Positions 9,724 through 27,129 of a stretch of 64,000 nucleotides of DNA are shown one piece after another. How positions within the stretch are numbered: position 1 is the stretch's first letter; the number at the start of each line of letters is the position of its first letter. Below the pieces are notes generated by a model, which searched no databases, was not told where the DNA came from, and saw only the letters and a list, made by a program, of their open reading frames with translations. The stretch is from the IMG/VR virus record IMGVR_UViG_3300028883_000032, positions 1 through 64,000 of that record; one strand, written 5' to 3'. Made by a program: the position numbers and the translations under genes.

Positions 9724-9752
9724 TTGCATTTGGCGTTCATATTTTGTATAAT
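9724..9752 (+). promoter_or_regulatory. sigma70-type promoter for glycan cluster
   Basis: TTGCAT-N17-TATAAT. Confidence 0.65.
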
Positions 9753-9784: not shown

Positions 9785-10777
9785 ATGAATATCATAGTGA
9801 ATTCTCTGATAAACGACAGAAGTTCATTTGGAAGAGTCGGCTATAATTTAGTTTTAGCTATGACTAAACTTGGTCATAAAGTTAAAACTGTTGCATGGCC
9901 GGAAAGTAATTTTGATATTGTAGAAACTCTACCAAAACCTGACTTTGCTAGCCCTGATTTATGGGTAAGGCTGTCGCATCCAGATGGCCCAGTAAGCCAT
10001 CCAGACTGTGAACACGCTGGGTTACTGACTGTATTTGAATCCACAGGACTATATAAGCACACAAAAATAGGTAACCTCAAACCCCTTGATTTCATCGCTA
10101 CTCCTAGCGAATGGTGTTCCAATATCTTAAGGAATATCAAGAAAGATATCCCAATCTTTACTTGGAATCACGGGTACAATCCAATCCTTCCTTTTAAAAC
10201 AAACATTAATGATCAAGTAACTACCCTACTAACTGTTGGGTGTATGGATGATCGTAAGCACATCTACAATTTTCTTAAATTATTTGAAGACAATTTTAGG
10301 AATTCAAATGAAATTAAGTTAATAGTAAAATCTCAAAAAGGATTTAATCCTAGGTATTGTCTTGATTGTAAAAACGTAAAATTTGTAGATAAAGAGCTTA
10401 ATAAATTAGAACTAGAAAAGCTTTATTTAAGTGCCAGCGCCTATGTTATGCCATCAAGGGGTGAAGCCTTTGGTTTAACCGCTTTGGAAGCCGCCATGAT
10501 GGGTATACCTATAATGGTCACTAATTTTAGTGGGCCAGTAGATTATTTAGACGATTGCGCATCCATTAAATTAGACTATGACCTAGTAGATACTCCAAAT
10601 AGCGGACCTTGGGCAGGAAAATGGGCAAAACCAACAGACGATGCCATCCTTACGGGAATTGAAGAGTTAGTGACTAACAATAAATTGGGTATAAAAGCAG
10701 TAGATGTGGCACAAAATGTTAGAGACAAGTGGTCATGGGAAATAACTACTGAAAGGTTTTTAAATAGTATACAATGA
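9785..10777 (+). CDS. glycosyltransferase family 4
   Basis: YVMPSRGEAFGLTALEAA (E-x7-E) motif. Confidence 0.9.
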   Translation: MNIIVNSLINDRSSFGRVGYNLVLAMTKLGHKVKTVAWPESNFDIVETLPKPDFASPDLWVRLSHPDGPVSHPDCEHAGLLTVFESTGLYKHTKIGNLKPLDFIATPSEWCSNILRNIKKDIPIFTWNHGYNPILPFKTNINDQVTTLLTVGCMDDRKHIYNFLKLFEDNFRNSNEIKLIVKSQKGFNPRYCLDCKNVKFVDKELNKLELEKLYLSASAYVMPSRGEAFGLTALEAAMMGIPIMVTNFSGPVDYLDDCASIKLDYDLVDTPNSGPWAGKWAKPTDDAILTGIEELVTNNKLGIKAVDVAQNVRDKWSWEITTERFLNSIQ

Positions 10778-12417
10778 AAATTCCTTTATTTGTATCAACA
10801 TTCAATAGAATAGAGACTGTAAAACAATCATTGACAAGTCTTGCAAACTCAAACTTACCAGACTATGTCCAAGTAATCATTAGTGACGATGGATCAAGCG
10901 ATCCAGTTGTTCCACAAATTAAAAGGTTATATGGAAAGTTAGGTTGGGAAATACATGCGAACCATCATAGGGAGTTCCCCGAAGGAAAGTTGGCCCCTAT
11001 ACGAGAACATTTAGACAGGTTTCCAGATGCCCCATACTTTCTAGTTTCTGATTCTGATATGTTATACACCAAAAACTGGGTACAGGCTTTAGAAAAGATA
11101 TATCGTGACACTAAAAAGGATGGTGTAAATCCGGCCGTTATAACTGGTTTTGATACGGAGTGGAATCAACATAGAATAGTAGAAAGACATGGATATTGGG
11201 GATTTAAGGGAACTGTTGGTGGTGCAAACCTATTAGCAGATAGAGAATTTTACAATAAGTGGCAATGGAATGGAATGCATTGGGATTGGGGAATATGTTC
11301 AAAAGCAGGAGAATTTGATTACAAGCTCGTTAGCAGTTGTCCATCTTTAACTGAACATATTGGGAAACATGGTAAATTTTCAAAACCGGGTAAATATGAC
11401 GTAGCGGTTCATTTTGAAGGTGAAGATTTCGATGCCATGGAAATTTTTAATCCGGAGTATAAATACTTGAGTGAAACAGCACTAGTAACAGCAGGACAAG
11501 GGGTAGGAAACATAGTAATGGCTACTCCATTAATAGAAGCTCTGCACGATTTAGGATATATAGTAGATTTTATGGTTGGATGTAACTGGCCTAAAAGCAA
11601 AGAGTTGTTTTTTGAAAACCCACATTGTAGAAATGTTGCTTGGAGTAATGAGCATATAGATGGTTTCTATAATATAGTTGTTGAAACTGCTTGGAGTTTT
11701 TCTTCTTGGGAAGGAAAATATGCTACCAATAGGTTGGCACGACACGATCGCCACGTAAAAGTGGACAAATCAGTAGTTGACCACCAATACCGTAATCATG
11801 AAATCCACCATAACCTAACTCCAGCAATTCAGCTTGGTATGGATGAATCCAAGATGAACAGCTACAAGCCTTTTGTTAACACCCTAATGCCCCACAACTA
11901 TAATACTGATTCAAAGGTTATAGGAATTCATGCAGGGTGTAATCCAAGACCCGAATGGGAAGGTAAAAAATATCCGTACTATCAAGAGCTTGTTTACTTA
12001 TTAAAAAGAGACGGATATAAAATTGCACTATTTGGCACTGATACGGACCAACATTTAAAGGATGTTGATTATGACTTTATAGGAGCAACTAATGTCCAAG
12101 GAGCAGCAGAACGCATCGCTGGCTGTGATATATTTATTTCTAACGATTCTGGATTAATGCATTGTGCAGGCGCCAGCCAAATACCACAAATAGCTATATT
12201 TGGGGGCGAAGGTTACAAGAAAATGGTTAAAAACGACCCTCGACTATATAATGATAAGGCTATTGTAATTGGCGCGGAAGACTTAAGCACTATTTCTCCG
12301 GAACAGGTGATGGATACTCTCAAGTATGGTAAGTTCTCTAAAAATAAGTATCAAGGTAGTGTAGATATTCCAATTAAACCAAAAGTGAAGCGTAAAACAA
12401 CCACTAAAAAGAAATGA
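10774..12417 (+). CDS. bifunctional glycosyltransferase, GT2 (N-term) + GT9-like (C-term)
   Basis: IISDDGSSD/SDSD N-terminal; GVGNIVMATP and FISNDSGLMHCAGA..IAIFG C-terminal. Confidence 0.85.
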   Translation: MKIPLFVSTFNRIETVKQSLTSLANSNLPDYVQVIISDDGSSDPVVPQIKRLYGKLGWEIHANHHREFPEGKLAPIREHLDRFPDAPYFLVSDSDMLYTKNWVQALEKIYRDTKKDGVNPAVITGFDTEWNQHRIVERHGYWGFKGTVGGANLLADREFYNKWQWNGMHWDWGICSKAGEFDYKLVSSCPSLTEHIGKHGKFSKPGKYDVAVHFEGEDFDAMEIFNPEYKYLSETALVTAGQGVGNIVMATPLIEALHDLGYIVDFMVGCNWPKSKELFFENPHCRNVAWSNEHIDGFYNIVVETAWSFSSWEGKYATNRLARHDRHVKVDKSVVDHQYRNHEIHHNLTPAIQLGMDESKMNSYKPFVNTLMPHNYNTDSKVIGIHAGCNPRPEWEGKKYPYYQELVYLLKRDGYKIALFGTDTDQHLKDVDYDFIGATNVQGAAERIAGCDIFISNDSGLMHCAGASQIPQIAIFGGEGYKKMVKNDPRLYNDKAIVIGAEDLSTISPEQVMDTLKYGKFSKNKYQGSVDIPIKPKVKRKTTTKKK

Positions 12418-13313
12418 GAGTCCTACTAGGGTTCCCACAGCAAGATCAGCAAACTGGTGTTTATATTAAACGTGCCTTTGAGGAACTTGGACATGAAATA
12501 GTTGATATCCATGACCCAAAAATTCAGGATCGCGAACTATTTCTGTCAATGGCTAAACAACATCGTCCAGATTTAGCGTTTATGAGTAGAAGTGAGCCCT
12601 ATTGTCATGTTATTGAACGTTTGCGAGATGTATGTTTAACATCATTTTGGAATGTAGATGTTAGAGCAGACATAGGACCTTGGGCCAACCTCGGCGCGCT
12701 TATGCAATATACCCACTTCTGGTTCACCATAGCAAAAAGCCAGATACCAGATTTTAAGAAGGAGTATGGTAACAAAAATGTGTATTGGCTTTCAGAAGGA
12801 TGCGACAGTATCCATTCCATCCGTCCCGGAGGCCGTACTGAAGAATTTGACGTGTTCTTTGCCGGAAGTATCGATCAGTTTCACGAGGACTGCGGTAACA
12901 GAGTATCAGTATTAAACGCTATTCAAAATCACGGATTTACGTGTCAGTATTCTCATGGGCTTAAATTGGTAAATGAATATCATAATGATTATGTTGGTAG
13001 ATCTCAAGTATGTTTAGGAAACAGCGCTTTTCCGCAGGTTGAGCTTAGCATGTCTGCTAGAGATTACCGCATCATGGGAGCAGGAGGATTTCTTTTAACA
13101 AATAATGTGAAGGGAATAGAAAACTGGTTTAAAATTGGCAAAGAATGCGAAACCTATTCTTCCCCCGAGGAAGCTGTTGAAAAAGTAGAATACTACTGTA
13201 TTCATAAGGAAGAGCGTATAAAAATAGCAGATACTGGATACAAAGCAGCCCACGAAAAACACAGGTTTAAAAACAGAATTGAAGAAGTAATAAAAATTGC
13301 GAAAAGTTTCTAA
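12414..13313 (+). CDS. CgeB-like glycosyltransferase
   Basis: SARDYRIMGAGGFLLTN..YSSPEEAVEKVEYY..RIKIA..GY motif. Confidence 0.85.
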   Translation: MRVLLGFPQQDQQTGVYIKRAFEELGHEIVDIHDPKIQDRELFLSMAKQHRPDLAFMSRSEPYCHVIERLRDVCLTSFWNVDVRADIGPWANLGALMQYTHFWFTIAKSQIPDFKKEYGNKNVYWLSEGCDSIHSIRPGGRTEEFDVFFAGSIDQFHEDCGNRVSVLNAIQNHGFTCQYSHGLKLVNEYHNDYVGRSQVCLGNSAFPQVELSMSARDYRIMGAGGFLLTNNVKGIENWFKIGKECETYSSPEEAVEKVEYYCIHKEERIKIADTGYKAAHEKHRFKNRIEEVIKIAKSF

Positions 13314-13315
13314 TA

Positions 13316-14047
13316 ATGCAAAAAAATTTATATCTTATATATGCTATGCAGCGTTCTGGGCAACATGCCATTATCAATTGGATGGGAAACCAGCTTGGTA
13401 ATTGTAAATTTATTAATAATGCGGGCTGGTCTACTGTTGTTAGAGAGTTTGGAAGTAGATATGGTGGAACAGAGGATGAAGGTAAATGTTATGGAAACGC
13501 CACGGAAGATAAGTTTGATAATCTGATTGTAAGCTTTGAAAATTTTTCCCCAAAAGATGTTCTTGACGAAAGGCTTACAGACATAATGGCCCAAGTACAT
13601 AAAAAATACAATAATGTATATAGCGTGATAATTCTTCGCGACCCACTAAATTGGTTAGCAAGTATGATGAAAATGCATTGGAGGTTTGCAGAGTATTTTA
13701 AAAACCACTATCTAGCAGATGTATATATAAAACAAGCAGAAGAGTATTTCGGCAATACAAAGTATTTATCAAATTTAGTAAAAATTAATTATAATACATG
13801 GTGTACAGATACGACATATAGACATGAATTGTCAGTTAAATTAAATTTTAATGAATTTACTGATGAGGGAATTTATACTCCAAGTTTTACAGGTAGTAGT
13901 TTTGATAATGAAATAAAGTTTCCAAACTTTCAAATATTTAGTCGCTACAAGGAATACGAGGGAAATTTACAGTTTGAGGAAATTTTGCAAATATACCCAA
14001 GATTGCTAAGTATAGCAAAAGATGAATTTAACATTGAAAAAGAATAA
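13316..14047 (+). CDS. sulfotransferase-like protein
   Basis: AMQRSGQHAIINW (5'-PSB-like) and ILRDPLNWLAS (3'-PB-like). Confidence 0.65.
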   Translation: MQKNLYLIYAMQRSGQHAIINWMGNQLGNCKFINNAGWSTVVREFGSRYGGTEDEGKCYGNATEDKFDNLIVSFENFSPKDVLDERLTDIMAQVHKKYNNVYSVIILRDPLNWLASMMKMHWRFAEYFKNHYLADVYIKQAEEYFGNTKYLSNLVKINYNTWCTDTTYRHELSVKLNFNEFTDEGIYTPSFTGSSFDNEIKFPNFQIFSRYKEYEGNLQFEEILQIYPRLLSIAKDEFNIEKE

Positions 14048-14052
14048 ATAAT

Positions 14053-15033
14053 ATGTTTAGAAAACCTAAATTAGAGCTTGAACATTACGGAACTAAACCT
14101 TTAAGGAAGGAAGATTGGGTTTCTAGGGGAGTAAAGTTTGAGCCAACTGGCGAAGAATATGATTTGGCTGTAAGTTTAGTGACATATAATACCGCAAATA
14201 GTTTAAAAGACGTGGCGGAATATTTAGAAACTACAGCCCCTGATATAAAAAAGAAGTATATTTTTGTTAACTCCGGAAGTATAGATCACTCGGCGGAACT
14301 ACTCCCATTGTTACCTTTTGATAAAGTGGTTGTTAGCCACACTTATGATGAAGCAATTGAACATAGGTATAGTTTGGCTTCAGCACTAAATGATGCGTTT
14401 GCAATAGCACATAAACTTGGTATAAAATATTTGTTAGTGCATGACATAGATGCCTACGTGGAAGAGGAAGGGTTGTATCAAATGTTTAATGTGCTAAAAA
14501 AAGCCCCTAAAGACGTGATAGCAGTTACGTGTCCTCCAACAGGAGGATATGAGCATAGGGTAGAAGGCAGGAAAGATGAGGCGACAGTATTAAGTTGGGG
14601 GAGTGGATGGACTGCGGCAATAACAAAAGTGGAAGAACATATAAAACATTGGGGATGGTGGAGTGAGGCGCTTATGCCCTGTTTAGGAATTGATAGCGAC
14701 TTAAATAGGCGCATTAATGAGACACCCTATAAGCGACTAATGGATAAAAATTATTTTCACGACCATTACGGAAATATCGGATTAAAGACCACGGCACAGA
14801 TAGGGGGAATTCCTGTAGATAGGCCCGATGGAATTGGTTGGGAAGACGCCTACCGAAGAATTTGGGGAGGCCCCACCGGTAAAGAAAAATTCCAATATCC
14901 ATTAAACAGGCAAGATTGCTTAAGGGGGGTATCCTACAATTTTACACCTATACAGGATAATAGGATATATAGAAGAGTAGATTCGTATAATTTAGAGGGA
15001 GTACCAAAGCTATGCTTACCCACGGAAGCGTAA
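14053..15033 (+). CDS. GT2-like glycosyltransferase
   Basis: VSLVTYN, VNSGSID, VHDIDA (DxD). Confidence 0.65.
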   Translation: MFRKPKLELEHYGTKPLRKEDWVSRGVKFEPTGEEYDLAVSLVTYNTANSLKDVAEYLETTAPDIKKKYIFVNSGSIDHSAELLPLLPFDKVVVSHTYDEAIEHRYSLASALNDAFAIAHKLGIKYLLVHDIDAYVEEEGLYQMFNVLKKAPKDVIAVTCPPTGGYEHRVEGRKDEATVLSWGSGWTAAITKVEEHIKHWGWWSEALMPCLGIDSDLNRRINETPYKRLMDKNYFHDHYGNIGLKTTAQIGGIPVDRPDGIGWEDAYRRIWGGPTGKEKFQYPLNRQDCLRGVSYNFTPIQDNRIYRRVDSYNLEGVPKLCLPTEA

Positions 15034-15647
15034 CGGGGGCTGCAACAATGCCATCACAGGCCGTAATTAGAAGTTGGGAAAAAACCTCAAACATGTCACA
15101 GTTGGCTCCTATTTACTATTTTATCGGCATCGGCGAAAATTGGAAAAATATTTTAGAATTGGGGACAGGTTTTGGGGTGTCTACAACTACCCTTACCGAA
15201 ATAGCTAAAGTAAATGGGGGATTGGTAATTACGGTAGACAGAGAAGACATGAGAGATAAAATAAAAAATTTGACAAACTACAAATTTATCCAAACACATA
15301 CTGGCGACACTTATAGAATAAAAAATGTTTTAAAAAATAACAATATAGAGGAATTAGATTGTTTGTTTATAGATGCCGATCATCACGCAGATTCAATACG
15401 TGAGGACTTCCACAGGTATAAATACTTGGTAAAACCTGGAGGTTTTGTTATTTTTCACGATGTGGTTTTAGTGGACGAGGAGTGTGAAGGTTCCGAATTC
15501 TGGTTCAATGAGGACTTTGGAGAAGGTTTTGAAAAACTAACATTAAGTTTTTGCAATGGGCTGGGAATACTAAGGAAGATAGATTATGGAAAAGATCTCA
15601 GTAATGATTCCAACAATGAATCTGGATCTAGTAGAATACTCGATTAA
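15012..15647 (+). CDS. class I SAM-dependent methyltransferase (Methyltransf_24-like)
   Basis: ILELGTGFGVST, LFIDADH, VKPGGFVIFHD. Confidence 0.88.
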   Translation: MLTHGSVTGAATMPSQAVIRSWEKTSNMSQLAPIYYFIGIGENWKNILELGTGFGVSTTTLTEIAKVNGGLVITVDREDMRDKIKNLTNYKFIQTHTGDTYRIKNVLKNNNIEELDCLFIDADHHADSIREDFHRYKYLVKPGGFVIFHDVVLVDEECEGSEFWFNEDFGEGFEKLTLSFCNGLGILRKIDYGKDLSNDSNNESGSSRILD

Positions 15648-16380
15648 AAGTTTATTACAAAATTCAACTTATGAACCAGAAATACTAGTTTGGGACAACC
15701 GTGTAGAGCCTGAAGAAGGGCATCTCGGGGTAGCTCAGGAAACACATGAGCTGTGGCTAAAATTTGATGGGAAAATTAGGGTATTTGGGGATTTAGGAAA
15801 TATAGGCATCCCAGCCGCCTACAATCGAATGGCTAAAAAGGCGTCAAACGGTATTCTGTGGGCGGCTGACGATGACTATTACTACCCTAGGGGATGGGAT
15901 GAACCACTTATAGAAATAATGGAAAGAGACAGATTGAGTTCTGTTACTCCACACATCTCGAGACATCCAATAATGATAGAGCCTCTAGACGGCAACCCTA
16001 ACACTATATATAAGGATTTTGGAAGAGCTCCAGATGTATTTAGAAAAGATGAGTTTGACAAATTCGCCAACGAACAATTACCGTGGCCAGGCTTCAAAGA
16101 AGAAAGAGTAAACCCTAATTGCCCATGTGCAGTATGGAAAGATACTTGGGCAGCTCTGGATGGGTGGGATGAAGACTATTTCCCCGGATTTGGAGCTGAT
16201 CCTGACTTCCTTATAAGATTGCGAAACATGGGTGGAAAAATGTTAAGTGCCCCAAATTGTTATTTTTACCATTTTTCAGGAACAACATCTAGTGGAATGC
16301 CTAGGAACGAATCTCGTGAAATGTTTCTAAAAAAACATGGAATTGCAATTAAACAATTTGTGGAAAGCATGAGAAAGTAG
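15586..16380 (+). CDS. glycosyltransferase family 2
   Basis: SVMIPT, NIGIPAAYN, ADDD, GWDEDYFPGFGADPD. Confidence 0.85.
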   Translation: MEKISVMIPTMNLDLVEYSIKSLLQNSTYEPEILVWDNRVEPEEGHLGVAQETHELWLKFDGKIRVFGDLGNIGIPAAYNRMAKKASNGILWAADDDYYYPRGWDEPLIEIMERDRLSSVTPHISRHPIMIEPLDGNPNTIYKDFGRAPDVFRKDEFDKFANEQLPWPGFKEERVNPNCPCAVWKDTWAALDGWDEDYFPGFGADPDFLIRLRNMGGKMLSAPNCYFYHFSGTTSSGMPRNESREMFLKKHGIAIKQFVESMRK

Positions 16381-16430
16381 CACCGACGCATATAAAATTA
16401 TACCAGCGTTTTTGAAAGCGCATTTAAAGC

Positions 16431-18525: not shown

Positions 18526-18535
18526 GAGTAATAGA

Positions 18536-20151: not shown

Positions 20152-20557
20152 GATTCACAAGAACAAGGACAACAGGGGATTTTTTCAAGAAATACTGAAA
20201 ACCTCTCAAGTACCAGAAAAAATTGAGCAGATTTCTATCTCTGAAACTTATCCGGGAGTTATTAAGGCATTTCATAAACACGAACACCAATGGGATTATT
20301 GGTACTTGATATCGGGAAACATAGAGGCGAAGTTAGTTCATGAAAAGCACCAAATTCCCCTATCATACTATTTATCCGGGGACGACGATGTAATACTAGT
20401 AATACCCCCTTATTGGTACCACGGATACAAAGTTTTAGGTAACACTCCGGCAAAAATGCTATATATGGTTAGCACAGAATATAACCCTGATAGCCCAGAT
20501 GAAGAAAAGATATCTCCGTATTCTTATGGAGTTACGTGGGATACAGAAAACCGATGA
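20120..20557 (+). CDS. dTDP-4-dehydrorhamnose 3,5-epimerase-like cupin
   Basis: DNRGFFQEI, PGVIKAFHKH..QWD, IPP..YHG. Confidence 0.88.
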   Translation: MDHEFAPKIIKIHKNKDNRGFFQEILKTSQVPEKIEQISISETYPGVIKAFHKHEHQWDYWYLISGNIEAKLVHEKHQIPLSYYLSGDDDVILVIPPYWYHGYKVLGNTPAKMLYMVSTEYNPDSPDEEKISPYSYGVTWDTENR

Positions 20558-21318
20558 ATACTAAAATAAAAGATTTTTGGAATACAAGGTCTCTTGGTAA
20601 AAATCCGGGATCTGATGACTATCATATAAAAAATTTGGAGCTTAAAGCACTAATTAAAACTATACGCAGTATAGAAAACTCCCACAGCAATATCGCAGAT
20701 GTTGGGTGTGGAAACGGAGAAACACTTAACAAGCTGTGTGAGGTACTTAATTGTGCGGGTTTTGGGATAGATTATTCCAAAGGAATGGTTGATTCCGCAA
20801 ATAAGTTTGGCGGAGAAATGTTTGTAGAGGACGACATATCCGAAGACTTACAAAAGGACTATTTAGAGTCAAGTGTGGTTTATACGGAAAGATGCTTAAT
20901 AAACATATCACCAGAAAAAAGAAAAAAAGCTTTAGAGAATATTTATAAATTAGTAAAACCTAATGGATTTTATTTAATGATTGAAAGTTTTATCGAACCA
21001 TTAAATAGAATAAATGTAATAAGAGAAAAACTTAATCTGTATAGAATTGAACCTCCGTGGCATAACAGCTTTCTAAAAAGAGACGAAATAGTCAAATTAG
21101 CGACAGATTCGGGTTTTTCATTAATCGGAGAATACACATTCACAAGTTCCTACTACTTTTTGAGTAGAGTTGCTAATGCAAAGCTTTCAAATTTATTTGG
21201 CAGAACTCCCAAATACAACGACTTCTTAAATAATATAGGAGAGCACTTACCGTCTGTTGGGGATTTTGGTCCAGTAAAAATGTTAATTTGGGAGAAAGGT
21301 TGTCTTGAGAACAATTAA
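20554..21318 (+). CDS. class I SAM-dependent methyltransferase
   Basis: ADVGCGNG, GIDYSKGM, TERCLIN. Confidence 0.85.
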   Translation: MNTKIKDFWNTRSLGKNPGSDDYHIKNLELKALIKTIRSIENSHSNIADVGCGNGETLNKLCEVLNCAGFGIDYSKGMVDSANKFGGEMFVEDDISEDLQKDYLESSVVYTERCLINISPEKRKKALENIYKLVKPNGFYLMIESFIEPLNRINVIREKLNLYRIEPPWHNSFLKRDEIVKLATDSGFSLIGEYTFTSSYYFLSRVANAKLSNLFGRTPKYNDFLNNIGEHLPSVGDFGPVKMLIWEKGCLENN

Positions 21319-22405
21319 TTTATATAATCCAAACCTACAACTCCAAGATAAATTAGCAGTAATGGAAGCCCTTAATCTAGATTGGAGTTCTGGACAATAC
21401 TATAAACCGATAGAGCAGTTTGAAGCCGCTTTTGCAAATCGTGTGGGTCGCAAGTATGCGCTAATGACACCAAATTGTACAATAGCAATTGAACTTGCTT
21501 TACGAGCTCGCGGTATAAAAAAAGACAATTTGGTGGCCGTCCCAAACAATACATGGATAGGAAGCACAGCAGGGATACACACTGTTGGAGCTTCTCAAGT
21601 TGTGTGTGATGTTGGGCAACGAAGTTGGTGTTTAGAGGTAACTAATCTTATAGAAGCTGATTATAGATTAAACGCAGTGGTGGTTGTAGATTTATTTGGA
21701 CAAATGCCGGACTATAATTCATTATTAAATTATACAGAAAAACACGGCATATTCGTAATTGAAGACGCTGCGGAAGCATTAGGTTCAACATATAATGGAA
21801 AACCCGCTGGCTCTTTTGGGGATGTTAGTGTCTTCAGTTTTCATCGTTCAAAAACCATCGCTTGTGGAGAAGGTGGAATGGTAGTAACAGATAACGACAA
21901 ACTTTACGAGATGATGTGGACACTGCGCGATCAAGGCAGACCAAAAAGTTGCGAAACCTATAAAAATGAATACCTAGCACATAAATTTATTCCATCAAAT
22001 ATGCAGGCAGCTCTAGGATTAAGCCAGCTTATGAGGTTAGACAGCATTCTAGAACATAAGAGAAGGGTATTTAGGTGGTACCATAAACACATCAATATGG
22101 ACGACAAGTCTCTAACTCCTGATATCCCAGGAGTAAGTAATTCATATTGGGTACCTATTTTAGTATTTAAGGATAACACAATTAATACTGATTTTGTAAT
22201 TAACACATTAGCGAAAAATGGAATTTACACCAGGCGGTGTTTCTACCAACTATCAGAATTACCAGCATACTCAAGAATAGGGTTTTTTAGAAATAATACG
22301 CCTAATTGTAAATGGTTACAAGACCATGCCATTAATTTACCATCTCCGATGGATTTAACAGAAGAAGATGTCGAAAGGATAGCAGGAGTAATCAATATAT
22401 TATGA
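21305..22405 (+). CDS. DegT/DnrJ/EryC1/StrS sugar aminotransferase (perosamine synthase-like)
   Basis: IEDAAEALGS, SFHRSKTIACGEGG. Confidence 0.92.
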   Translation: MRTINLYNPNLQLQDKLAVMEALNLDWSSGQYYKPIEQFEAAFANRVGRKYALMTPNCTIAIELALRARGIKKDNLVAVPNNTWIGSTAGIHTVGASQVVCDVGQRSWCLEVTNLIEADYRLNAVVVVDLFGQMPDYNSLLNYTEKHGIFVIEDAAEALGSTYNGKPAGSFGDVSVFSFHRSKTIACGEGGMVVTDNDKLYEMMWTLRDQGRPKSCETYKNEYLAHKFIPSNMQAALGLSQLMRLDSILEHKRRVFRWYHKHINMDDKSLTPDIPGVSNSYWVPILVFKDNTINTDFVINTLAKNGIYTRRCFYQLSELPAYSRIGFFRNNTPNCKWLQDHAINLPSPMDLTEEDVERIAGVINIL

Positions 22406-22977
22406 AAGTTCAGCTAGGGGCGGGCGATGACCCCAAGAGGGGTTATACAAACGTAGATTTATATGAAACAATCCCAGATGGAGATTATACATACATCTCT
22501 AAAGATATTTTTGAATTTTTGGAAGAAACACCTGATAATTCACTAGATGAAATTTATGCTAAATGGTTATTTGAACACATCGCTTTTCCTGATGAGGAGC
22601 GTTTGTGGAGAGAATGTTACAGAACTCTTAAGCCGGGAGGGAAATTACAAATATATGTACCAGATTTTGAATTTTTATGTGAGCGCTTTCTCAAGGCTAA
22701 AGAAGGATTTAAGGGGTTCTATAAACTGACTACACCGGACGACCCAGCTTACGGTTTTGGGTTTGGCTACGATCGTGAAATAGAAAATAGGTGGGGTACT
22801 CTTATGGTATTTATGTTTGGAGTTCAAACCAACCCAGGACAATTTCACAGGAATGCCTATACAGAACAAAGAGTAATAGATATATTTAATTACATTGGAT
22901 TCACTAATATTGAAACCAACCTTGTAATGGAACGAAATATTAGAAACGTAGATGCAATAGGAATTAAACCGGAATAA
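22402..22977 (+). CDS. class I SAM-dependent methyltransferase (paralogue of 16431-16979)
   Basis: QLGAG, FEHI, RTLKPGG..VPDFEF; shares RWG..FG.Q.N.G..H.NAYT with 16431. Confidence 0.85.
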   Translation: MKVQLGAGDDPKRGYTNVDLYETIPDGDYTYISKDIFEFLEETPDNSLDEIYAKWLFEHIAFPDEERLWRECYRTLKPGGKLQIYVPDFEFLCERFLKAKEGFKGFYKLTTPDDPAYGFGFGYDREIENRWGTLMVFMFGVQTNPGQFHRNAYTEQRVIDIFNYIGFTNIETNLVMERNIRNVDAIGIKPE

Positions 22978-22992
22978 CAGATTAGTAATACT

Positions 22993-23424
22993 ATGGAAAA
23001 GCCAACTACTATTAAGGACGTAAAACTAATTGAGTTTAATCAAATCAAAGAGAATAACGGAACTCTAGTACCAATAGAGGACTTTGAGCTTCCATTTGAA
23101 ATTAAACGCACATTTTACGTCTATAAAGTAGACTCAAACGACCTTAGAGGACAGCATGCTCACAAACAAGGAGAGCAAGTTCTAATATGTTTGGGAGGCA
23201 CTTTAGTATGTATGGTAGACGACGGGGTGGATAGAAAACATTTTGTTTTGGATTCACCAACGCAAGGTTTGTACATTCCAAAAATGATATGGGATGAACA
23301 GATATACATATCCAAAGACACTTTAATGCTATCGTTAGCAAACAACAACTACGACTCCGAGGACTACATACTAAACTATAAAGAATTCCGACAATTAAAA
23401 ACAGAAAATAATGAAAATGGCTGA
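22993..23424 (+). CDS. FdtA/QdtA-family sugar 3,4-ketoisomerase
   Basis: PFEIKRTFYVY, RGQHAHK, GLYIP.MIW. Confidence 0.9.
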   Translation: MEKPTTIKDVKLIEFNQIKENNGTLVPIEDFELPFEIKRTFYVYKVDSNDLRGQHAHKQGEQVLICLGGTLVCMVDDGVDRKHFVLDSPTQGLYIPKMIWDEQIYISKDTLMLSLANNNYDSEDYILNYKEFRQLKTENNENG

Positions 23425-24265
23425 ACAAACAACAGTTTTGGTGCTAGGAAGCAAAGGCTACATAGGATCCAGAATATTACAACAACTAAAAAAAGAACAG
23501 TCTGCTTTTAAAGTTGTTGAAGATGGTCGTGAATACGACCTCTTGGAATTGCAGCAGGTACAAAAGCTGTATGATAAACAACACATCGATGAGGTTATTG
23601 TAGCAGCTGGAGTAGGAAACCGAGCTTCAGACAGAGATTCTATGTGGGCTATGATGGAAAACATACAAATTACAGCCAATGTTCTTTACACCTTTGGCGG
23701 AAATTGTAATATTGTATACCTAGGAACAGGATTAGACGACAAGTATGAGGGTTCTTATTATCAAAGAGTAAAGCACATATGCAGACTAATGACTGCTGAC
23801 TTGTGTAAGAACGAAGGTTTGGGGGATGTTACCCATGTGAGGCTATTCCATGTATACGGGCCAAACGAGCCAAAATACAGATTAATACCCTTTATAGTTA
23901 ACCAAATAAATACTAAAGGCGTTGTTAACTTGGAGCGTAATATTTGTATAGACCCGCTACATGTAGATGAAATATGCAAAACTATATGTAATTACGTCCG
24001 TCGCGGACACGACAAAGTACAAAATGTATGGAATGTGGGTACAGGGACCGGAACATTAATTAGTGATCTAGCAAAACAAATTGCTGTAATTATGGGAAAA
24101 CCCGAAACGCCTATAATCTGTAACCCGTACTGTGTATCACACCATAATTATGTTCCCGAGGGACCCTACTTAAATCAAAGGGAACTACAACCAGAAGAGC
24201 ACATTTGGCTAGAGGAAGCATTGCCAGAAATTGTGACATCATATACCAAAACATACCATGAGTAA
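23411..24265 (+). CDS. NAD-dependent epimerase/dehydratase
   Basis: GSKGYIG, YxxxK, RLFHVYGP. Confidence 0.82.
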   Translation: MKMAEQTTVLVLGSKGYIGSRILQQLKKEQSAFKVVEDGREYDLLELQQVQKLYDKQHIDEVIVAAGVGNRASDRDSMWAMMENIQITANVLYTFGGNCNIVYLGTGLDDKYEGSYYQRVKHICRLMTADLCKNEGLGDVTHVRLFHVYGPNEPKYRLIPFIVNQINTKGVVNLERNICIDPLHVDEICKTICNYVRRGHDKVQNVWNVGTGTGTLISDLAKQIAVIMGKPETPIICNPYCVSHHNYVPEGPYLNQRELQPEEHIWLEEALPEIVTSYTKTYHE

Positions 24266-25217
24266 ATTAGTAATAACCGGAGGATTGGGCCACATAGGAT
24301 CTGTAATATTAGCTAAACTATCCAATTTACGCGATTCCGGTAGAGGCTTTAGCGAAATAGTCATTATTGATGCATGTTTACAAAGACAAGAAACAGTATT
24401 CTTTGATAGTAATATCCCGTTGAGAAATTTTAAATTAATACAAAAAGTATTACCAACAGACAATATAGATGATGTGGTGGAAGTGCTGGATGGGGCGGAT
24501 GCCGTTATACATTTAGCAGCTGTTACTGATGCCCCAAGCACCTTTGAAAGACCCGAATATACGAGGATAACAAATGTTGATTCCACAAAACAACTTGTAA
24601 ATGCATGTGAAAAGGTGGGAGTGAAAAAATTTGTGTTTGCGTCGTCTACAAGTATATACGGGCCCTCCAAGAAAGTAAACTTAGAAAACGATGCATGCAT
24701 AAACCCACAAACCCCGTATGCCAGATCAAAGTTAGCCGCGGAGGATTTAGTATCCAAAACTGATATGAACTACGCAACATTCAGAATGGGTACAATATAT
24801 GGCTACACTCCCGGTATGCGTTTTCATACCGCTGTAAATAGGTTTATTTGGCAAGCTATAACCAAACAGCCAATCACCATCTGGTCAGGGGCAGCGGACA
24901 GTGTTAGGCCATATTGCCACGTGTATGCAGCATGTGAGGCTATGCTTCGATTTGTGTCACCAGTAAAGGATACCAAATCTGGAATCTATAATATAGTCTC
25001 TGATCACTATACCCCCAACTCCATAATTGAAGTTATCAAACAGGAGATCCCAAACGTAGAAGTGATAACAACCCCAACAAGAATACTTAACCAAGATTCT
25101 TATTTTGCACCTAATGATAAAGCCAATCAAGCCGGTTTATTGAAACAAGAATATGTGGGAAATACTGACCACTTATTAGATTACATTCGCTACATCAAAA
25201 CCAAGTTTGAAGGATGA
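24258..25217 (+). CDS. NAD-dependent epimerase/dehydratase
   Basis: TGGLGHIGS, HLAA, SSTSIYG, YARSK. Confidence 0.9.
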   Translation: MSKLVITGGLGHIGSVILAKLSNLRDSGRGFSEIVIIDACLQRQETVFFDSNIPLRNFKLIQKVLPTDNIDDVVEVLDGADAVIHLAAVTDAPSTFERPEYTRITNVDSTKQLVNACEKVGVKKFVFASSTSIYGPSKKVNLENDACINPQTPYARSKLAAEDLVSKTDMNYATFRMGTIYGYTPGMRFHTAVNRFIWQAITKQPITIWSGAADSVRPYCHVYAACEAMLRFVSPVKDTKSGIYNIVSDHYTPNSIIEVIKQEIPNVEVITTPTRILNQDSYFAPNDKANQAGLLKQEYVGNTDHLLDYIRYIKTKFEG

Positions 25218-26308
25218 TATTAACAAGTAGGCCTTGTATAGGCAAAGAAGAACAAGATGCGGCTATGAGGGTTTTAAAAAGTGGATGGTATATACACGGT
25301 CAAGAACTAGAATCATTTGAAAAAGAATTCGGAGAATATCACTCAACACATTGGTGGGGTAAAGAAGCCGTTGGAGTAAGTAATGGCACAGCCGCGCTAT
25401 TTTTAACTTTGCAGGCATACGGTGTTGGTCCGGGTGACGAGGTTATAGTACCTGAAGTGACTGCATTTCCTACAGCAGAAGCTGTCTGGCAATGTGGAGC
25501 GACTCCCGTTCCTGCCGCCGTTCATCCACATTCAAAATTACTTGACTTTCGTACAATAAAAGATTATACTACAAGTAGAACTAAAGCAATTATAGGTGTA
25601 CATTTATATGGGCAACCTTTACAAACAGTTGACTTTTATCAATTTGCACGTTCAGAAAATCTAATTTTTATTGAAGATTGTGCACAAGCTTTTGGAGCAA
25701 AATTAAACGATTTTCCCGTTGGTCTTTGTAGCGATGCCTCGTGCTTTTCTTTCTATCCTACCAAAAATATTACAGCTGCAGGGGATGGAGGAGCGGTTAT
25801 TTGCACACCAAAAATCGCTGACAAAATTAAGAAGTTAAGAAACCACGGAATAGTAAATTGTACTTGGGACCACACTGAAGTTGGTTGGAACTTCAGGATG
25901 AGTGAGCTGTCTGCGGCTATTTTAAGAGAACAGCTAAAAAAAGTAGACTGGTTTATTGAAGAACGCAGGAAACTAGCATTTAATTACATTGATTTGTTAT
26001 CTACGTTTCAACCATACAATAATGGGTCGAAAGCGGACAGATATATAATCCCCAAAACTTATACTCCGGGAGCCAAACACTCTTATCACTTATTTGTGAT
26101 TCAAGCAAGAAACATACGCGATTTAATGTGTACGGAAGATAATTTCAGCCTTATTGATGTAAAACCCGGGTATCATTATCCGTATACTATTACATCAAAT
26201 CGAGATAAACCAATTCAAAGTATAGACAACTTTAATTGTATTAGCCTTCCTTTGTATGTAGGCTTAACAGAAAAAGAGCAAGAACTAATAGTAAACCACA
26301 TATTTTAA
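25214..26308 (+). CDS. DegT/DnrJ/EryC1/StrS sugar aminotransferase
   Basis: SNGTAAL, IEDCAQAFG, SFYPTKNITAAGDGG. Confidence 0.92.
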   Translation: MILTSRPCIGKEEQDAAMRVLKSGWYIHGQELESFEKEFGEYHSTHWWGKEAVGVSNGTAALFLTLQAYGVGPGDEVIVPEVTAFPTAEAVWQCGATPVPAAVHPHSKLLDFRTIKDYTTSRTKAIIGVHLYGQPLQTVDFYQFARSENLIFIEDCAQAFGAKLNDFPVGLCSDASCFSFYPTKNITAAGDGGAVICTPKIADKIKKLRNHGIVNCTWDHTEVGWNFRMSELSAAILREQLKKVDWFIEERRKLAFNYIDLLSTFQPYNNGSKADRYIIPKTYTPGAKHSYHLFVIQARNIRDLMCTEDNFSLIDVKPGYHYPYTITSNRDKPIQSIDNFNCISLPLYVGLTEKEQELIVNHIF

Positions 26309-27128: not shown

Positions 27129-27129
27129 A

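What the first reader, a model, noticed from the sequence alone, without database searches (positions are those of the whole stretch)
9785..26308. 16.5-kb, 20-gene glycan synthesis and decoration cluster in a phage
Seen: about six glycosyltransferases (GT4, GT2-GT9 fusion, CgeB-like, GT2s), five methyltransferases including an NDP-sugar C-methyltransferase, two sulfotransferase-like proteins, two DegT aminotransferases, FdtA, RmlC and two epimerases, mostly overlapping or closely spaced. No flippase, polymerase, nucleotidyltransferase or obvious membrane protein is present. Known: FdtA plus DegT makes 3-amino-3,6-dideoxyhexoses. Inference: the cluster builds a methylated or sulfated oligosaccharide in the cytoplasm, most plausibly on virion proteins or DNA rather than on the host O-antigen.
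Basis: partly seen in the sequence, partly recalled or inferred. Interest (0 to 1): 0.65.

Follow-up and report, generated by a model that had tools for sequence, protein, structure and literature searches.

The report
Phage-borne rare-sugar glycan synthesis cluster
A 207-kb uncultured phage devotes 8% of its genome to 20 soluble enzymes that should turn host sugar nucleotides into rare amino, C-methyl, O/N-methyl and possibly sulfated sugars and string them into a glycan; the gene list is real and inherited within the phage lineage, but what the glycan is attached to remains unknown.

Summary
Window 9785-26308 holds 20 tightly packed + strand genes:
- six glycosyltransferases with seven GT domains
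- five methyltransferases, one a full-length TcaB9-type NDP-sugar 3-C-methyltransferase
- two sulfotransferase-fold proteins
- two DegT aminotransferases, FdtA, an RmlC/CapF-like cupin and two SDRs
- one unknown gene

The contig is a complete-looking 206.9-kb phage. Its cluster matches the rest of the genome in composition. A distant relative, G005, carries a 13-gene version in the same genomic slot, so a chimeric contig is rejected.

The whole genome lacks a nucleotidyltransferase, a true 4,6-dehydratase, a priming transferase, Wzx and any polytopic membrane protein. It also lacks a ThyA-type hydroxymethylase.

The C-methyltransferase, cupin and FdtA form a contiguous triad in many IMG/VR viral contigs but almost never in the best cellular loci.

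Cytoplasmic synthesis of a decorated oligosaccharide from host precursors is well supported. The acceptor is unresolved: phage or virion protein about 0.4, host envelope glycan about 0.35, DNA about 0.07. Large sugar-gene clusters in lytic phages have been known since P-SSM2 (2005), so this is a new variant of a known kind.

The parts
9785..10777 (+). g1, GT4-family glycosyltransferase (330 aa)
   Evidence: Pfam Glycos_transf_1 3.8e-14, GT4-conflict 9e-12. No TM segment.
10774..12417 (+). g2, two-domain glycosyltransferase: N-terminal GT2 (GT-A) plus C-terminal GT9 (heptosyltransferase family)
   Evidence: Pfam PF00535 residues 6-137 and PF01075 residues 387-501. No close relative among 5.8 bn proteins. 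A viral GT-A+GT9 family exists in the Atlas (row 9). G005 has a separate GT9 gene.
12414..13313 (+). g3, CgeB-like glycosyltransferase (Glyco_trans_1_2)
   Evidence: Pfam PF13524 9.6e-18. A homologous gene lies in the G005 cluster.
13316..14047 (+). g4, sulfotransferase-fold protein of a large uncharacterised family
   Evidence: AF2 with a 49-sequence alignment gave pLDDT 83. Top Foldseek PDB hits are nearly all PAPS sulfotransferases, prob 0.99-1.0 and TM 0.4-0.56. Invariant R13-G15-H17 and R108-D109-N112-S116 motifs. 3288 family representatives. Pfam Sulfotransfer_4 only 0.019.
14053..15033 (+). g5, GT2 glycosyltransferase
   Evidence: Pfam PF00535 1.9e-5, just over the cut-off. Also found by the genome-wide GT2 scan.
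15012..15647 (+). g6, SAM methyltransferase of the CmcI/rhamnosyl-O-methyltransferase type
   Evidence: Pfam Methyltransf_24 8e-14, RMNT_CmcI 1.4e-6. Homologue in the G005 cluster.
15586..16380 (+). g7, GT2 glycosyltransferase
   Evidence: Pfam PF00535 6.4e-11. Homologue in G005.
16431..16979 (+). g8, small class-I methyltransferase, paralogue of g16
   Evidence: Pfam Methyltransf_11 9.4e-5. g8/g16-like genes in 13 of 80 viral cassette loci, up to 37% identity.
16979..17347 (+). g9, unknown 122-aa helical protein; the ATG at 16979 overlaps the g8 stop and is preferred over the TTG at 16946
   Evidence: No Pfam, NCBIfam or PDB match. 50% identical to a gene next to the g11 homologue in G005. 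TAATG junction.
17347..18525 (+). g10, NDP-hexose 3-C-methyltransferase (TcaB9/KijD1/TylC3 family)
   Evidence: Full-length PDB match to TcaB9 at 1e-77. Pfam Methyltransf_13+23+14. The D203-Q204-Y206-E208-H209 block is invariant among relatives. No Cys in the first 80 residues.
18536..19372 (+). g11, GT-A-fold (GT2-like) glycosyltransferase of a mostly viral family
   Evidence: Atlas features 0.96 to viral clusters, structure TM 0.58-0.68 to GT2 families. 48% identical homologue in G005.
19372..20151 (+). g12, sulfotransferase-fold protein
   Evidence: Atlas features 0.96 to a sulfotransferase family, structure TM 0.74. No Pfam hit.
20120..20557 (+). g13, small cupin sugar epimerase/isomerase (RmlC/CapF C-terminal type)
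   Evidence: Pfam Polysacc_synt_C 2.4e-13, dTDP_sugar_isom 8e-10. PDB Cap5F cupin 1e-9 and RmlC 5e-4. Follows the C-MT directly in 46 of 80 viral loci.
20536..21318 (+). g14, class-I SAM methyltransferase, possibly an N-methyltransferase
   Evidence: Pfam Methyltransf_25 6.5e-11. Weak PDB similarity to phosphoethanolamine N-methyltransferases.
21305..22405 (+). g15, DegT-family PLP aminotransferase, perosamine-synthase-like (probable 4-aminotransferase)
   Evidence: Pfam DegT 2e-79. Best PDB match is GDP-perosamine synthase at 8e-52.
22402..22977 (+). g16, small class-I methyltransferase, paralogue of g8
   Evidence: Pfam Methyltransf_11 1.5e-7. Weak PDB similarity to N-methyltransferases.
22993..23424 (+). 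g17, FdtA-type NDP-4-keto-6-deoxyhexose 3,4-ketoisomerase
   Evidence: Pfam FdtA 2e-43 over the full profile. Homologue in 60 of 80 viral cassette loci, up to 53% identity.
23411..24265 (+). g18, short SDR, probable NDP-4-ketosugar reductase
   Evidence: Pfam Epimerase 2e-15. The N-terminus resembles GDP-fucose synthase.
24258..25217 (+). g19, GalE/MoeE5-like NDP-sugar 4-epimerase; not a 4,6-dehydratase
   Evidence: PDB MoeE5 6e-21, GalE 1e-17. The alignment shows the S-S-T-S-I-Y-G form, not the dehydratase T-D-E motif. Scores 62 bits against a 365-bit RmlB cut-off.
25214..26308 (+). g20, DegT-family PLP aminotransferase, QdtB/DesV-like (probable 3-aminotransferase partner of FdtA)
   Evidence: Pfam DegT 3e-83. 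Among named PDB matches, QdtB 1.5e-51 and DesV 1e-49.
26308..27866 (+). Downstream boundary genes, not part of the pathway: DUF488-N3a/DUF4326, RecU, a 93-aa ORF and dUTPase, followed by RNR
   Evidence: Pfam. RecU, dUTPase and RNR flank the G005 cluster in the same order.

Best explanation
This is a lineage-conserved phage operon for making and transferring rare sugars on the cytoplasmic side of the infected cell.

Shown: 20 soluble enzymes, with no nucleotidyltransferase, no true 4,6-dehydratase and no lipid-carrier machinery anywhere in the phage genome.

Inferred from family membership: the host supplies NDP-4-keto-6-deoxyhexose (most likely dTDP-4-keto-6-deoxyglucose from RmlA/RmlB), SAM, PAPS and glutamate.
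- Branch A: FdtA (g17) moves the keto group to C3, and the QdtB/DesV-like aminotransferase (g20) makes an NDP-3-amino-3,6-dideoxyhexose. There is no N-acyltransferase, so the amine is left free or is N-methylated (g8, g14, g16).
- Branch B: the TcaB9-type C-methyltransferase (g10) and the cupin epimerase (g13) act on the keto sugar. Either the reductase (g18) or the perosamine-synthase-like 4-aminotransferase (g15) then gives a C-methyl-6-deoxyhexose or a 4-amino derivative.
- g19 supplies a 4-epimer of a common NDP-sugar.
- Six glycosyltransferases with seven GT domains (g1, g2, g3, g5, g7, g11) build an oligosaccharide.
- g6 O-methylates it, and g4 and g12 probably sulfate it.

Most likely acceptor (inference, about 0.4): a phage-encoded, probably virion, protein glycosylated directly in the cytoplasm. 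This would resemble Bacillus spore-crust, mycobacteriophage-virion and giant-virus fibril glycosylation. The general pathway reading I hold at about 0.85.
For: Gene content.

Genome-wide absences: NTP_transferase, true RmlB, Bac_transf and Wzx. No TM segment in any cluster protein, and no genome ORF with more than 4 TM-like segments.

Phage identity: terminase, tail sheath, baseplate, DNA polymerase, primase and a virus record rated 100% complete by CheckV.

Native to the phage: codon usage r = 0.969 against the rest of the genome, within the range of other 20-gene blocks. Tetranucleotide profile is typical.

Lineage conservation: relative G005 shares 50 of 106 ORFs in synteny. It carries a 13-gene glycan cluster between AAA_24/DUF669 and RecU/dUTPase/RNR, the same slot.

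Virus-typical cassette:
- 392 IMG/VR contigs encode a C-MT relative.
- The C-MT, cupin, FdtA triad is contiguous in 37 of 80 viral loci and 0 of 80 cellular loci.
- Viral C-MTs cluster on a tree with the query.

Protein-acceptor lean: a CgeB-like GT is kept in both phages. CgeB is reported to glycosylate the crust protein CgeA in the cytoplasm (PMC13577073).
Against: There is no direct evidence for any acceptor.

The cluster sits among replication and nucleotide-metabolism genes, not next to structural genes. In mycobacteriophages the glycosylation genes lie next to them (my recollection of Freeman et al. 2023, which I could not read).

No Ser/Thr-rich tails were seen in predicted proteins.

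The characterised GT9 acceptors I know are mainly LPS inner-core lipids (background knowledge).

Regiochemistry of both aminotransferases and of the C-methyltransferase, and the nucleotide carrier (dTDP, GDP or UDP), are inferred from nearest solved homologues at roughly 30-40% identity.

Sulfotransferase activity is inferred from fold and motifs only. The phage encodes no APS kinase.

Confidence: 0.42

Rival explanations
1. Host envelope remodelling. The phage's soluble glycosyltransferases and sugar-tailoring enzymes act on the host's own undecaprenyl-phosphate-linked or lipid A-core intermediates. Host primer, flippase, polymerase and ligase then export an altered LPS, capsule or O-glycan. 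This would block superinfection or stop progeny sticking to lysed cells. It is the classical 'phage LPS genes' hypothesis.
For: All family types here (GT2, GT4, GT9, DegT, FdtA, RmlC-like, SDR) are typical of O-antigen and CPS loci. The GT9 family works on LPS core (Pfam description). O-unit GTs are normally soluble, so the lack of membrane proteins does not argue against it. Lytic cyanomyoviruses with 22-24 such genes have been read this way (PMC1079782; PMC12801897). The phage also encodes a protein with a T9SS C-terminal sorting domain 2.7 kb upstream, so it does send at least one product to the host surface.
Against: No phage precedent has been shown experimentally for cytoplasmic O-unit rewiring by a lytic phage. 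The known seroconverting phages I am aware of use membrane proteins such as Gtr, Oac and Wzy (background knowledge). The phage has no primer, flippase, polymerase or ligase of its own, so six foreign GTs would all have to fit host intermediates. The triad cassette is virus-typical rather than copied from cellular loci. The cluster is conserved in slot over deep divergence, at 25-50% identity.
Confidence: 0.35
2. DNA hypermodification. The glycosyltransferases attach the sugars to a modified base in phage DNA to evade restriction, as in T4 and the glycan-hypermodifying clusters described by Pyle et al.
For: The cluster lies next to RecU, dUTPase, RNR and replication genes. Phage GT-A and GT-B enzymes related to LPS enzymes do glycosylate 5hmC with up to three sugars (10.1101/2023.12.21.572611). 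An extra GT2 sits in the replication module at genome 194058-194561.
Against: The complete genome has no ThyA-family hydroxymethylase. It has no Tet/JBP hit, although that control was silent. The only C5-methylase hit is 13 bits in a 198-aa ORF with no Pfam hit. The phage makes normal dTMP precursors with ThyX and dUTPase. Known DNA glycans use hexose, HexNAc, heptose, Kdo or pentose with 1-2 GTs, not seven GT domains with amino/C-methyl deoxysugars and sulfotransferases.
Confidence: 0.07
3. Another soluble acceptor. The glycan is put on a host or phage non-structural protein, an RNA or a small molecule. Examples would be a secondary-metabolite-like glycoside or a decoy for a host defence.
For: The closest solved homologues of g10, g20 and g19 come from antibiotic deoxysugar pathways (TcaB9, KijD1, DesV, MoeE5). 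The window is rich in counter-defence and RNA-repair genes. The unknown g9 is conserved with g11.
Against: No aglycone-synthesis genes (PKS, NRPS, terpene) were seen among the window ORFs scanned. Seven GT domains suggest a polymer or oligosaccharide rather than a simple glycoside.
Confidence: 0.1
4. Artefact. The cluster is a cellular LPS locus joined to phage DNA by misassembly.
For: The contig comes from a metagenome and has no terminal repeat. Read-level support could not be obtained.
Against: Composition and codon usage match the rest of the genome. The genes are co-oriented and overlap with phage genes on the 3' side. An independently assembled, diverged relative has a homologous cluster between the same flanking phage genes.
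Confidence: 0.02

Closest known systems
Sugar/'LPS' gene islands of lytic cyanomyoviruses (P-SSM2, 24 genes; S-SCSM2R, 22 genes with 13 GTs; S-SCSM1)
   Same: A large set of glycosyltransferases and NDP-sugar epimerases in a big lytic myovirus. The function has never been shown (PMC1079782; PMC12801897).
   Different: The cluster has no DNA similarity to any GenBank phage, and the phage backbone is unrelated, with terminase at most 28.5% identical. This cluster adds a TcaB9-type C-methyltransferase, FdtA, two DegT, five methyltransferases and two sulfotransferase-fold proteins. It is one contiguous 16.5-kb operon-like block. A C-MT search of GenBank phages found only megaphages and Synechococcus phage DSL-LC02, at under 29% identity.
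Bacterial dTDP-3-amino-3,6-dideoxyhexose pathways (FdtA/FdtB/FdtC, QdtA/QdtB/QdtC; mycaminose Tyl1a/TylB/TylM1)
   Same: An FdtA-family ketoisomerase (2e-43) plus a QdtB/DesV-like PLP aminotransferase. Candidate N-methyltransferases as in TylM1-type tailoring.
   Different: No RmlA or RmlB in the genome. No LbH N-acetyltransferase among the 20 ORFs. FdtA is embedded with a C-methyltransferase and a second cupin.
Branched-chain deoxysugar pathways of actinomycete antibiotics (TcaB9, KijD1, TylC3; sibirosamine or kansosamine-type sugars, named from my own knowledge)
   Same: Full-length homology of g10 to TcaB9/KijD1 (1e-77), with the conserved catalytic block. It is accompanied by an epimerase, aminotransferase and methyltransferases.
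   Different: No 2,3-dehydratase was seen. g10 has no Cys in its first 80 residues, where I expect the zinc ligands. It belongs to a virus- and SAR11-dominated clade, not the actinomycete clade.
Cytoplasmic glycosylation of proteinaceous particles: Bacillus spore crust (CgeB/CgeA, sps genes), mycobacteriophage virions (Freeman et al. 2023, not readable here), Mimivirus and Megavirinae fibrils, chlorovirus capsid
   Same: Soluble GTs plus NDP-sugar tailoring and methyltransferases, with no lipid carrier, acting in the compartment where the particle is assembled. A CgeB-like GT is present (PMC13577073). Giant viruses encode rare bacterial-like amino-deoxysugar pathways (PMC10117803, abstract).
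   Different: No glycosylated acceptor is known here. The cluster is not adjacent to structural genes. Giant viruses usually encode their own 4,6-dehydratase, while this phage does not (background knowledge for giant viruses; for this phage).
Phage DNA glycan hypermodification clusters (T4 alpha/beta-GT; C5-MT/5mYOX/GT clusters of Pyle et al.)
   Same: Phage GT-A and GT-B enzymes derived from envelope-glycan enzymes, sometimes with an epimerase, near replication genes.
   Different: The base-activating enzyme that defines those clusters is absent from the genome. The gene number and sugar chemistry are far beyond known DNA glycans.

Membership tests
Wzx/Wzy- or ABC-type O-antigen/capsule locus | Priming phosphoglycosyl transferase (WbaP/PglC Bac_transf or WecA type) | tested here: not met
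   PF02397 is absent from the whole genome while the control rang in 10 of 14 genomes. No polytopic membrane protein.
Wzx/Wzy- or ABC-type O-antigen/capsule locus | Flippase or polymerase (Wzx, Wzy) or ABC exporter | tested here: not met
   PF01943 absent. No ORF with more than 4 TM-like segments in the genome and none in the cluster. ABC exporter families were not searched separately.
Wzx/Wzy- or ABC-type O-antigen/capsule locus | NDP-sugar synthesis genes plus several glycosyltransferases in one block | tested here: met
dTDP-Fuc3NAc/Qui3NAc pathway (RmlA, RmlB, FdtA/QdtA, FdtB/QdtB, FdtC/QdtC) | Glucose-1-phosphate thymidylyltransferase and dTDP-glucose 4,6-dehydratase | tested here: not met
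   No PF00483 in the genome. The only TIGR01181 hit is g19 at 62 of 365 bits, with an epimerase-type motif.
dTDP-Fuc3NAc/Qui3NAc pathway (RmlA, RmlB, FdtA/QdtA, FdtB/QdtB, FdtC/QdtC) | 3,4-ketoisomerase of the FdtA family | tested here: met
   g17, PF05523 2e-43 over profile positions 2-130 of 131.
dTDP-Fuc3NAc/Qui3NAc pathway (RmlA, RmlB, FdtA/QdtA, FdtB/QdtB, FdtC/QdtC) | PLP 3-aminotransferase | tested here: inconclusive
   Among named PDB matches, g20 is nearest QdtB and DesV. It is below every NCBIfam equivalog cut-off. Regiospecificity is not provable from sequence.
dTDP-Fuc3NAc/Qui3NAc pathway (RmlA, RmlB, FdtA/QdtA, FdtB/QdtB, FdtC/QdtC) | N-acetyltransferase (LbH) | tested here: not met
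   No hexapeptide or acetyltransferase family among the 20 ORFs.
NDP-hexose 3-C-methyltransferase (TcaB9/KijD1/TylC3) | Three-domain architecture with a SAM domain and a C-terminal Methyltransf_14 domain; conserved catalytic Tyr/Glu/His block | tested here: met
   Pfam PF08421+PF13489+PF08484. TcaB9 1e-77 over residues 2-389. D203, Q204, Y206, E208 and H209 are invariant. Assigning these as catalytic is my own knowledge.
NDP-hexose 3-C-methyltransferase (TcaB9/KijD1/TylC3) | Cys4 zinc site in the N-terminal domain | tested here: not met
   No cysteine in residues 1-80 of g10 and none in the clade consensus. That TcaB9 binds zinc through four Cys is from memory and from the Pfam name 'putative zinc binding domain'.
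PAPS-dependent sulfotransferase | Sulfotransferase fold with 5'-PSB and 3'-PB type motifs | tested here: met
   g4: Foldseek prob 0.99-1.0 to many sulfotransferases, with invariant RxGxH and RDPxN..(A)S blocks. g12: Atlas TM 0.74 to sulfotransferase clusters. Reading these blocks as PAPS-binding motifs is by eye.
PAPS-dependent sulfotransferase | Sulfuryl transfer activity and PAPS supply | not testable with these tools
   No APS kinase in the phage, so the host would have to supply PAPS.
Phage DNA sugar-hypermodification cluster | Enzyme that creates the reactive base (ThyA-type hydroxymethylase, or C5-MT plus 5mYOX/TET) | tested here: not met
   PF00303 absent. PF12851 absent, but the control was silent. 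PF00145 scored only 13 bits. The ORF concerned has no Pfam family.
Phage virion glycosylation operon (mycobacteriophage type) | Soluble GT(s) plus methyltransferase(s) without a lipid-carrier system | tested here: met
Phage virion glycosylation operon (mycobacteriophage type) | Location beside the capsid or tail genes whose products are glycosylated | tested here: not met
   Flanks are a tRNA island, RecU, dUTPase and RNR. Structural genes lie at about 74-110 kb and 166-190 kb on the other strand.
Phage virion glycosylation operon (mycobacteriophage type) | Glycan demonstrably on virion proteins | not testable with these tools
   Needs virions.

The most novel reading that the evidence does not exclude
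The C-methyltransferase, cupin, FdtA cassette would be a virus-specific, ocean-wide module, present in at least 392 IMG/VR contigs including T4-like myoviruses. Phages would use it to coat their own virions, or another phage protein, with C-methylated, aminated, methylated and in this lineage sulfated 6-deoxyhexoses made from host dTDP-sugar intermediates. That would make a 'phage glycocalyx' a common but unrecognised trait rather than a mycobacteriophage curiosity. It would also answer what the 20-year-old 'phage LPS genes' do.
Probability: 0.3. Interest if true: 0.8.

Novelty: new variant of a known kind. Interest (0 to 1): 0.55.

Why it matters
Lytic phages have been known since 2005 to carry large sets of sugar genes, but nobody has shown what they act on. 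This locus is an unusually complete and clean case. It has 20 soluble enzymes and no membrane step, sits in a complete genome, and is conserved in position in a distant relative.

Its core is a C-methyl/amino-deoxysugar cassette that appears typical of viruses rather than of cellular loci. That gives concrete reagents for in vitro sugar-nucleotide chemistry (g10, g13, g17, g20, g15, g18). It also gives a defined marker, the triad, for asking across hundreds of phages whether the target is the virion, the host envelope or DNA.

It would also add sulfotransferase-fold enzymes and branched-chain sugars to the phage repertoire. I found neither in the literature I could search.

Tried and rejected
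- **Microcystis phage Mel-JY01 as a relative.** It was the only blastn hit near the cluster. Only 8 of 348 ORFs match, chiefly RNR at 62.6% identity, so it is not kin. Its own small GT cluster is unrelated.
- **blastn of the cluster against GenBank phages:** no match.
- **Single-protein scans of IMG/VR** with g2, the 769-aa neighbour and the terminase: nothing.
- **Single-sequence AF2 of g4:** useless at pLDDT 37. It was rescued only with a 49-sequence alignment. A profile search of PDB sequences with the 4-sequence g4 alignment found nothing.
- **g9:** no Pfam, NCBIfam or PDB lead.
- **Promoter and terminator consensus scan:** not above shuffled expectation. The TTTGCA-18-TATAAT site at 9723-9752 is only a candidate.
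- **Genome-contig scan with the C-MT profile:** cellular hits are all at 36-41% identity across many phyla, so it gives no host clue.
- **Ser/Thr-rich tails as possible O-glycosylation sites:** none.
No read-level junction or expression test was done, and read laying was not used.
- **Freeman et al. 2023** could not be read.
- **Complex prediction** was not used, because no specific enzyme-acceptor pair could be justified.
- **Genetic code:** no alternative code was applied. TAG ends 17% of ORFs despite a CTA-anticodon tRNA.

Full report
**1. What is there**

Window 9785-26308 carries 20 + strand ORFs. Spacings run from -62 to +50 nt and 14 of 19 junctions overlap. The block is 8.0% of the genome.

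Pfam assigns 16 of the 20 ORFs:
- g1: GT4
- g2: an N-terminal GT2 fused to a C-terminal GT9 domain
- g3: Glyco_trans_1_2 (CgeB-like)
- g5 and g7: GT2
- g6: Methyltransf_24 / rhamnosyl-O-methyltransferase-CmcI
- g8 and g16: paralogous small Methyltransf_11 proteins
- g10: Methyltransf_13+23+14
- g13: a 145-aa cupin (Polysacc_synt_C / dTDP_sugar_isom)
- g14: Methyltransf_25
- g15 and g20: DegT
- g17: FdtA (2e-43)
- g18 and g19: SDR 'epimerase' family

Of the four ORFs without a Pfam hit, three were resolved at fold level.
- g12 matches sulfotransferase clusters in the ESM Atlas, with features 0.96 and structure TM 0.74.
- g4 has only three word-search relatives, but a profile search finds 3288 family representatives. 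With a 49-sequence alignment AF2 gives pLDDT 83. The top Foldseek PDB matches are nearly all PAPS sulfotransferases, with prob 0.99-1.0. Two blocks are invariant across the family, R13-G15-H17 and R108-D109-N112-S116. By eye these look like the 5'-PSB and 3'-PB motifs.
- g11 has a GT-A fold and belongs to mostly viral clusters.
- g9 stays unknown. Its likely start is the ATG at 16979, which overlaps the g8 stop.

**2. Finer enzymology from nearest solved structures**

- g10 aligns end to end with the sugar 3-C-methyltransferases TcaB9 and KijD1 at 1e-77. It keeps the D-Q-x-Y-x-E-H block that is invariant among relatives. It has no cysteine in its first 80 residues, so the N-terminal zinc site is missing.
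- g20 is nearest, among named PDB matches, to the 3-aminotransferases QdtB and DesV.
- g15 is nearest to GDP-perosamine synthase, a 4-aminotransferase.
- g19 is nearest to MoeE5 and GalE 4-epimerases. It shows the epimerase-type S-S-T-S-I-Y-G stretch rather than the dehydratase T-D-E motif.
- g13 resembles the C-terminal cupin (C3-epimerase) of CapF and also RmlC.
- g18 resembles GDP-fucose synthase only at its N-terminus.
- g14, g8 and g16 resemble N-methyltransferases only weakly.

All NCBIfam equivalog cut-offs are missed by a wide margin. Substrate and regiochemistry are therefore inferences.

**3. It is a phage, and the cluster belongs to it**

The window is the first 64 kb of a single 206,856-bp IMG/VR record that CheckV rates 100% complete.

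PHROG profiles find a large terminase, tail sheath, baseplate wedge, family-A DNA polymerase, primase/helicase, a 2046-aa RNA-polymerase-like protein, RNR and ligase. The window also has 21 tRNA genes. The lineage is an orphan: its terminase is at most 28.5% identical to any GenBank phage.

Cluster codon usage correlates with the rest of the genome at r = 0.969. Other 20-gene blocks range from 0.919 to 0.987. The tetranucleotide profile is typical.

The decisive evidence comes from a diverged relative, G005 (IMGVR_UViG_3300009008_002419, a 93.8-kb fragment).
- It shares 50 of 106 ORFs with this genome in conserved order. Terminase is 46% identical, DNA polymerase 36% and primase 34%.
- It carries a 13-gene glycan cluster: GT2, GT2, CgeB-like, g9-like, g11-like, MT24, a GT-A paralogue, GT2, C-MT, cupin, RmlD-like SDR, DegT and GT9.
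- That cluster sits between AAA_24/DUF669 on one side and RecU, dUTPase, RNR, the 754-aa protein, JAB and ThiF on the other.

In our contig the AAA_24/DUF669 side lies at the contig end (198.7-205.4 kb). The RecU side follows the cluster. The contig is therefore simply permuted, with a 9.7-kb tRNA island in between.

The cluster is thus an old, vertically kept feature of this phage lineage, expanded here from 13 to 20 genes. The 'chimeric contig' refutation fails.

**4. What is missing**

The whole genome was searched, with these results.
- No NTP_transferase.
- No real dTDP-glucose 4,6-dehydratase.
- No Bac_transf priming enzyme.
- No Wzx.
- No APS kinase.
- No cluster protein with a TM-like segment, and no ORF anywhere with more than four such segments.

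The phage must therefore draw activated 4-keto-6-deoxyhexose, PAPS and SAM from the host. It has no lipid-carrier route of its own.

For the DNA hypothesis, the results were as follows.
- No ThyA-family enzyme.
- No Tet/JBP hit, although that control was silent.
- Only a 13-bit C5-methylase hit in a 198-aa ORF that has no Pfam family.
- ThyX and dUTPase are present.

**5. A virus-typical cassette**

The C-methyltransferase has thousands of relatives at about 40% identity. One of them, P0042, lies on marine contigs from 266 collection blocks. There it sits inside a block of GT1, GT1, GT2, C-MT, cupin, FdtA, SDRs and DegTs, flanked by phage-like replication genes.

A profile scan finds 392 IMG/VR contigs with a relative. 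The best 80 loci compare with the best 80 cellular loci as follows.

| Feature | Best 80 viral loci | Best 80 cellular loci |
|---|---|---|
| Cupin homologue present | 59 | 6 |
| FdtA homologue present | 60 | 3 |
| C-MT immediately followed by cupin | 46 | 1 |
| C-MT, cupin, then FdtA contiguous | 37 | 0 |

- The viral C-MTs are diverse: 42 groups at 80% identity and 11 at 60%.
- On a FastTree phylogeny, 40 of 42 viral representatives, the query and six SAR11/TMED rows form one set with SH-like support 99.
- The viral label needs 4 changes on the tree, against 35 under shuffling.
- Two cassette-bearing contigs of about 165 kb have a T4-type Gp23 capsid gene, so the cassette crosses phage groups.

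Caveats: the cellular list is dominated by actinomycete antibiotic clusters, the query sits on a long branch, and some viral loci are near-duplicates.

In GenBank phages the C-MT is found only in megaphages and Synechococcus phage DSL-LC02, at under 29% identity. I found no paper describing this cassette in phages.

**6. Mechanism**

Shown: gene families, solubility, absences and conservation.

Inferred: the host supplies NDP-4-keto-6-deoxyhexose, which feeds two branches.
- FdtA (g17) with the 3-aminotransferase (g20) gives a 3-amino-3,6-dideoxyhexose. No acyltransferase is present, so the amine stays free or is N-methylated.
- The C-methyltransferase (g10), cupin (g13) and either the reductase (g18) or the 4-aminotransferase (g15) give a C-methyl or 4-amino-C-methyl 6-deoxyhexose. 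From my own knowledge this resembles virenose-, sibirosamine- or kansosamine-type sugars.

g19 adds a 4-epimer. Seven GT domains then assemble an oligosaccharide. g6 O-methylates it, and g4 and g12 probably sulfate it.

**7. The acceptor**

Three targets were weighed.

- **Phage or virion protein (about 0.4).** It fits the total lack of carrier machinery. It fits the CgeB-like GT kept in both phages; CgeB is reported to glycosylate the crust protein CgeA in the mother-cell cytoplasm (PMC13577073). It fits the analogy with mycobacteriophage and giant-virus particles. Against it, the cluster is not beside structural genes and no Ser/Thr-rich tails were found.
- **Host envelope remodelling (about 0.35).** This is the traditional reading for P-SSM2 and S-SCSM2R and cannot be excluded, because O-unit GTs are soluble. 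The GT9 domains fit it. So does a nearby phage gene with a T9SS C-terminal sorting domain, which also hints at a Bacteroidota host.
- **DNA (about 0.07).** It lacks its defining base-activating enzyme, and the chemistry is far beyond known DNA glycans.

**8. Verdict**

The locus is a new variant of a known but functionally unsolved kind, the sugar-gene islands of large lytic phages. Three things set it apart:
- its size
- its branched-chain/amino-sugar core cassette, which appears virus-typical
- two sulfotransferase-fold genes

Interest is moderate at 0.55. It would be high if virion glycosylation were shown.

Noticed in passing
window 4202-4275: tRNA with a CTA anticodon (amber suppressor type, labelled 'Pyl' by ARAGORN), one of 21 tRNA genes in the window. 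TAG still ends 17% of long ORFs, so there is no sign of recoding. It lies inside a 4-TM-like ORF (4123-4692) that may be spurious.
   Followed up: partly
window 5761-7026: A 421-aa protein ending in a T9SS C-terminal sorting domain (Por_Secre_tail, 3.6e-12). This suggests a Bacteroidota host and a phage product exported to the host surface. The N-terminal 340 residues have no family.
   Followed up: no
window 33641-34733: An adjacent JAB deubiquitinase-like and ThiF/E1-like gene pair, conserved in the relative G005. It may be a ubiquitin-like conjugation or counter-defence module.
   Followed up: no
window 39009-39629, 42561-43307, 55152-56093; genome 135754-137415: An RNA-repair and translation toolkit: Thg1-like tRNA-His guanylyltransferase, RlaP, a fragment-like alanyl-tRNA-synthetase domain, and a tRNA nucleotidyltransferase.
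   Followed up: no
window 41717-42559: A metallo-beta-lactamase-fold protein matching anti-Pycsar Apyc1 (3.8e-24), a likely cyclic-nucleotide-degrading counter-defence enzyme.
   Followed up: no
window 26308-26634: A DUF488-N3a/DUF4326 (rhodanese-phosphatase superfamily) gene overlaps the last cluster gene by 1 nt. DUF4326 has been proposed to process ADP-ribose-derived phosphates (PMC9503650). No homologue was found in the G005 cluster region.
   Followed up: partly
genome 194058-194561 (outside the window): A seventh GT protein, and the strongest GT2 match in the genome (87 bits). It sits alone between an RNA ligase and a helicase in the replication module. Its target could differ from that of the cluster.
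   Followed up: no
window 60338-62805; genome 81975-83357: An HNH/homing-endonuclease gene next to an ATP-dependent DNA ligase gene, with a second ligase-like C-terminal match elsewhere. In G005 the RNR ORF is 1125 aa against 617 aa here, which suggests an intein or insertion.
   Followed up: no
genome 153628-159768 (- strand): A 2046-aa protein with several RNA-polymerase beta/beta'-like PHROG matches, consistent with a phage-encoded multisubunit-type RNAP fusion.
   Followed up: no
L141 (Omnitrophota SAG AM-312-C06 contig, 54 kb): This locus carries homologues of g10, g13, g14, g15 and g19 in the same order as here, at 32-41% identity and GC 0.39. It may be a phage or a phage-derived island in that single-cell assembly.
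   Followed up: no
L001-L002 (Microcystis phage Mel-JY01, record 4750-8430 and 83441-89690): Mel-JY01 has its own unrelated sugar genes: a 1226-aa 'FkbM methyltransferase' next to a structural protein, which hits g1 weakly, and an 8-gene GT/methyltransferase block.
   Followed up: partly
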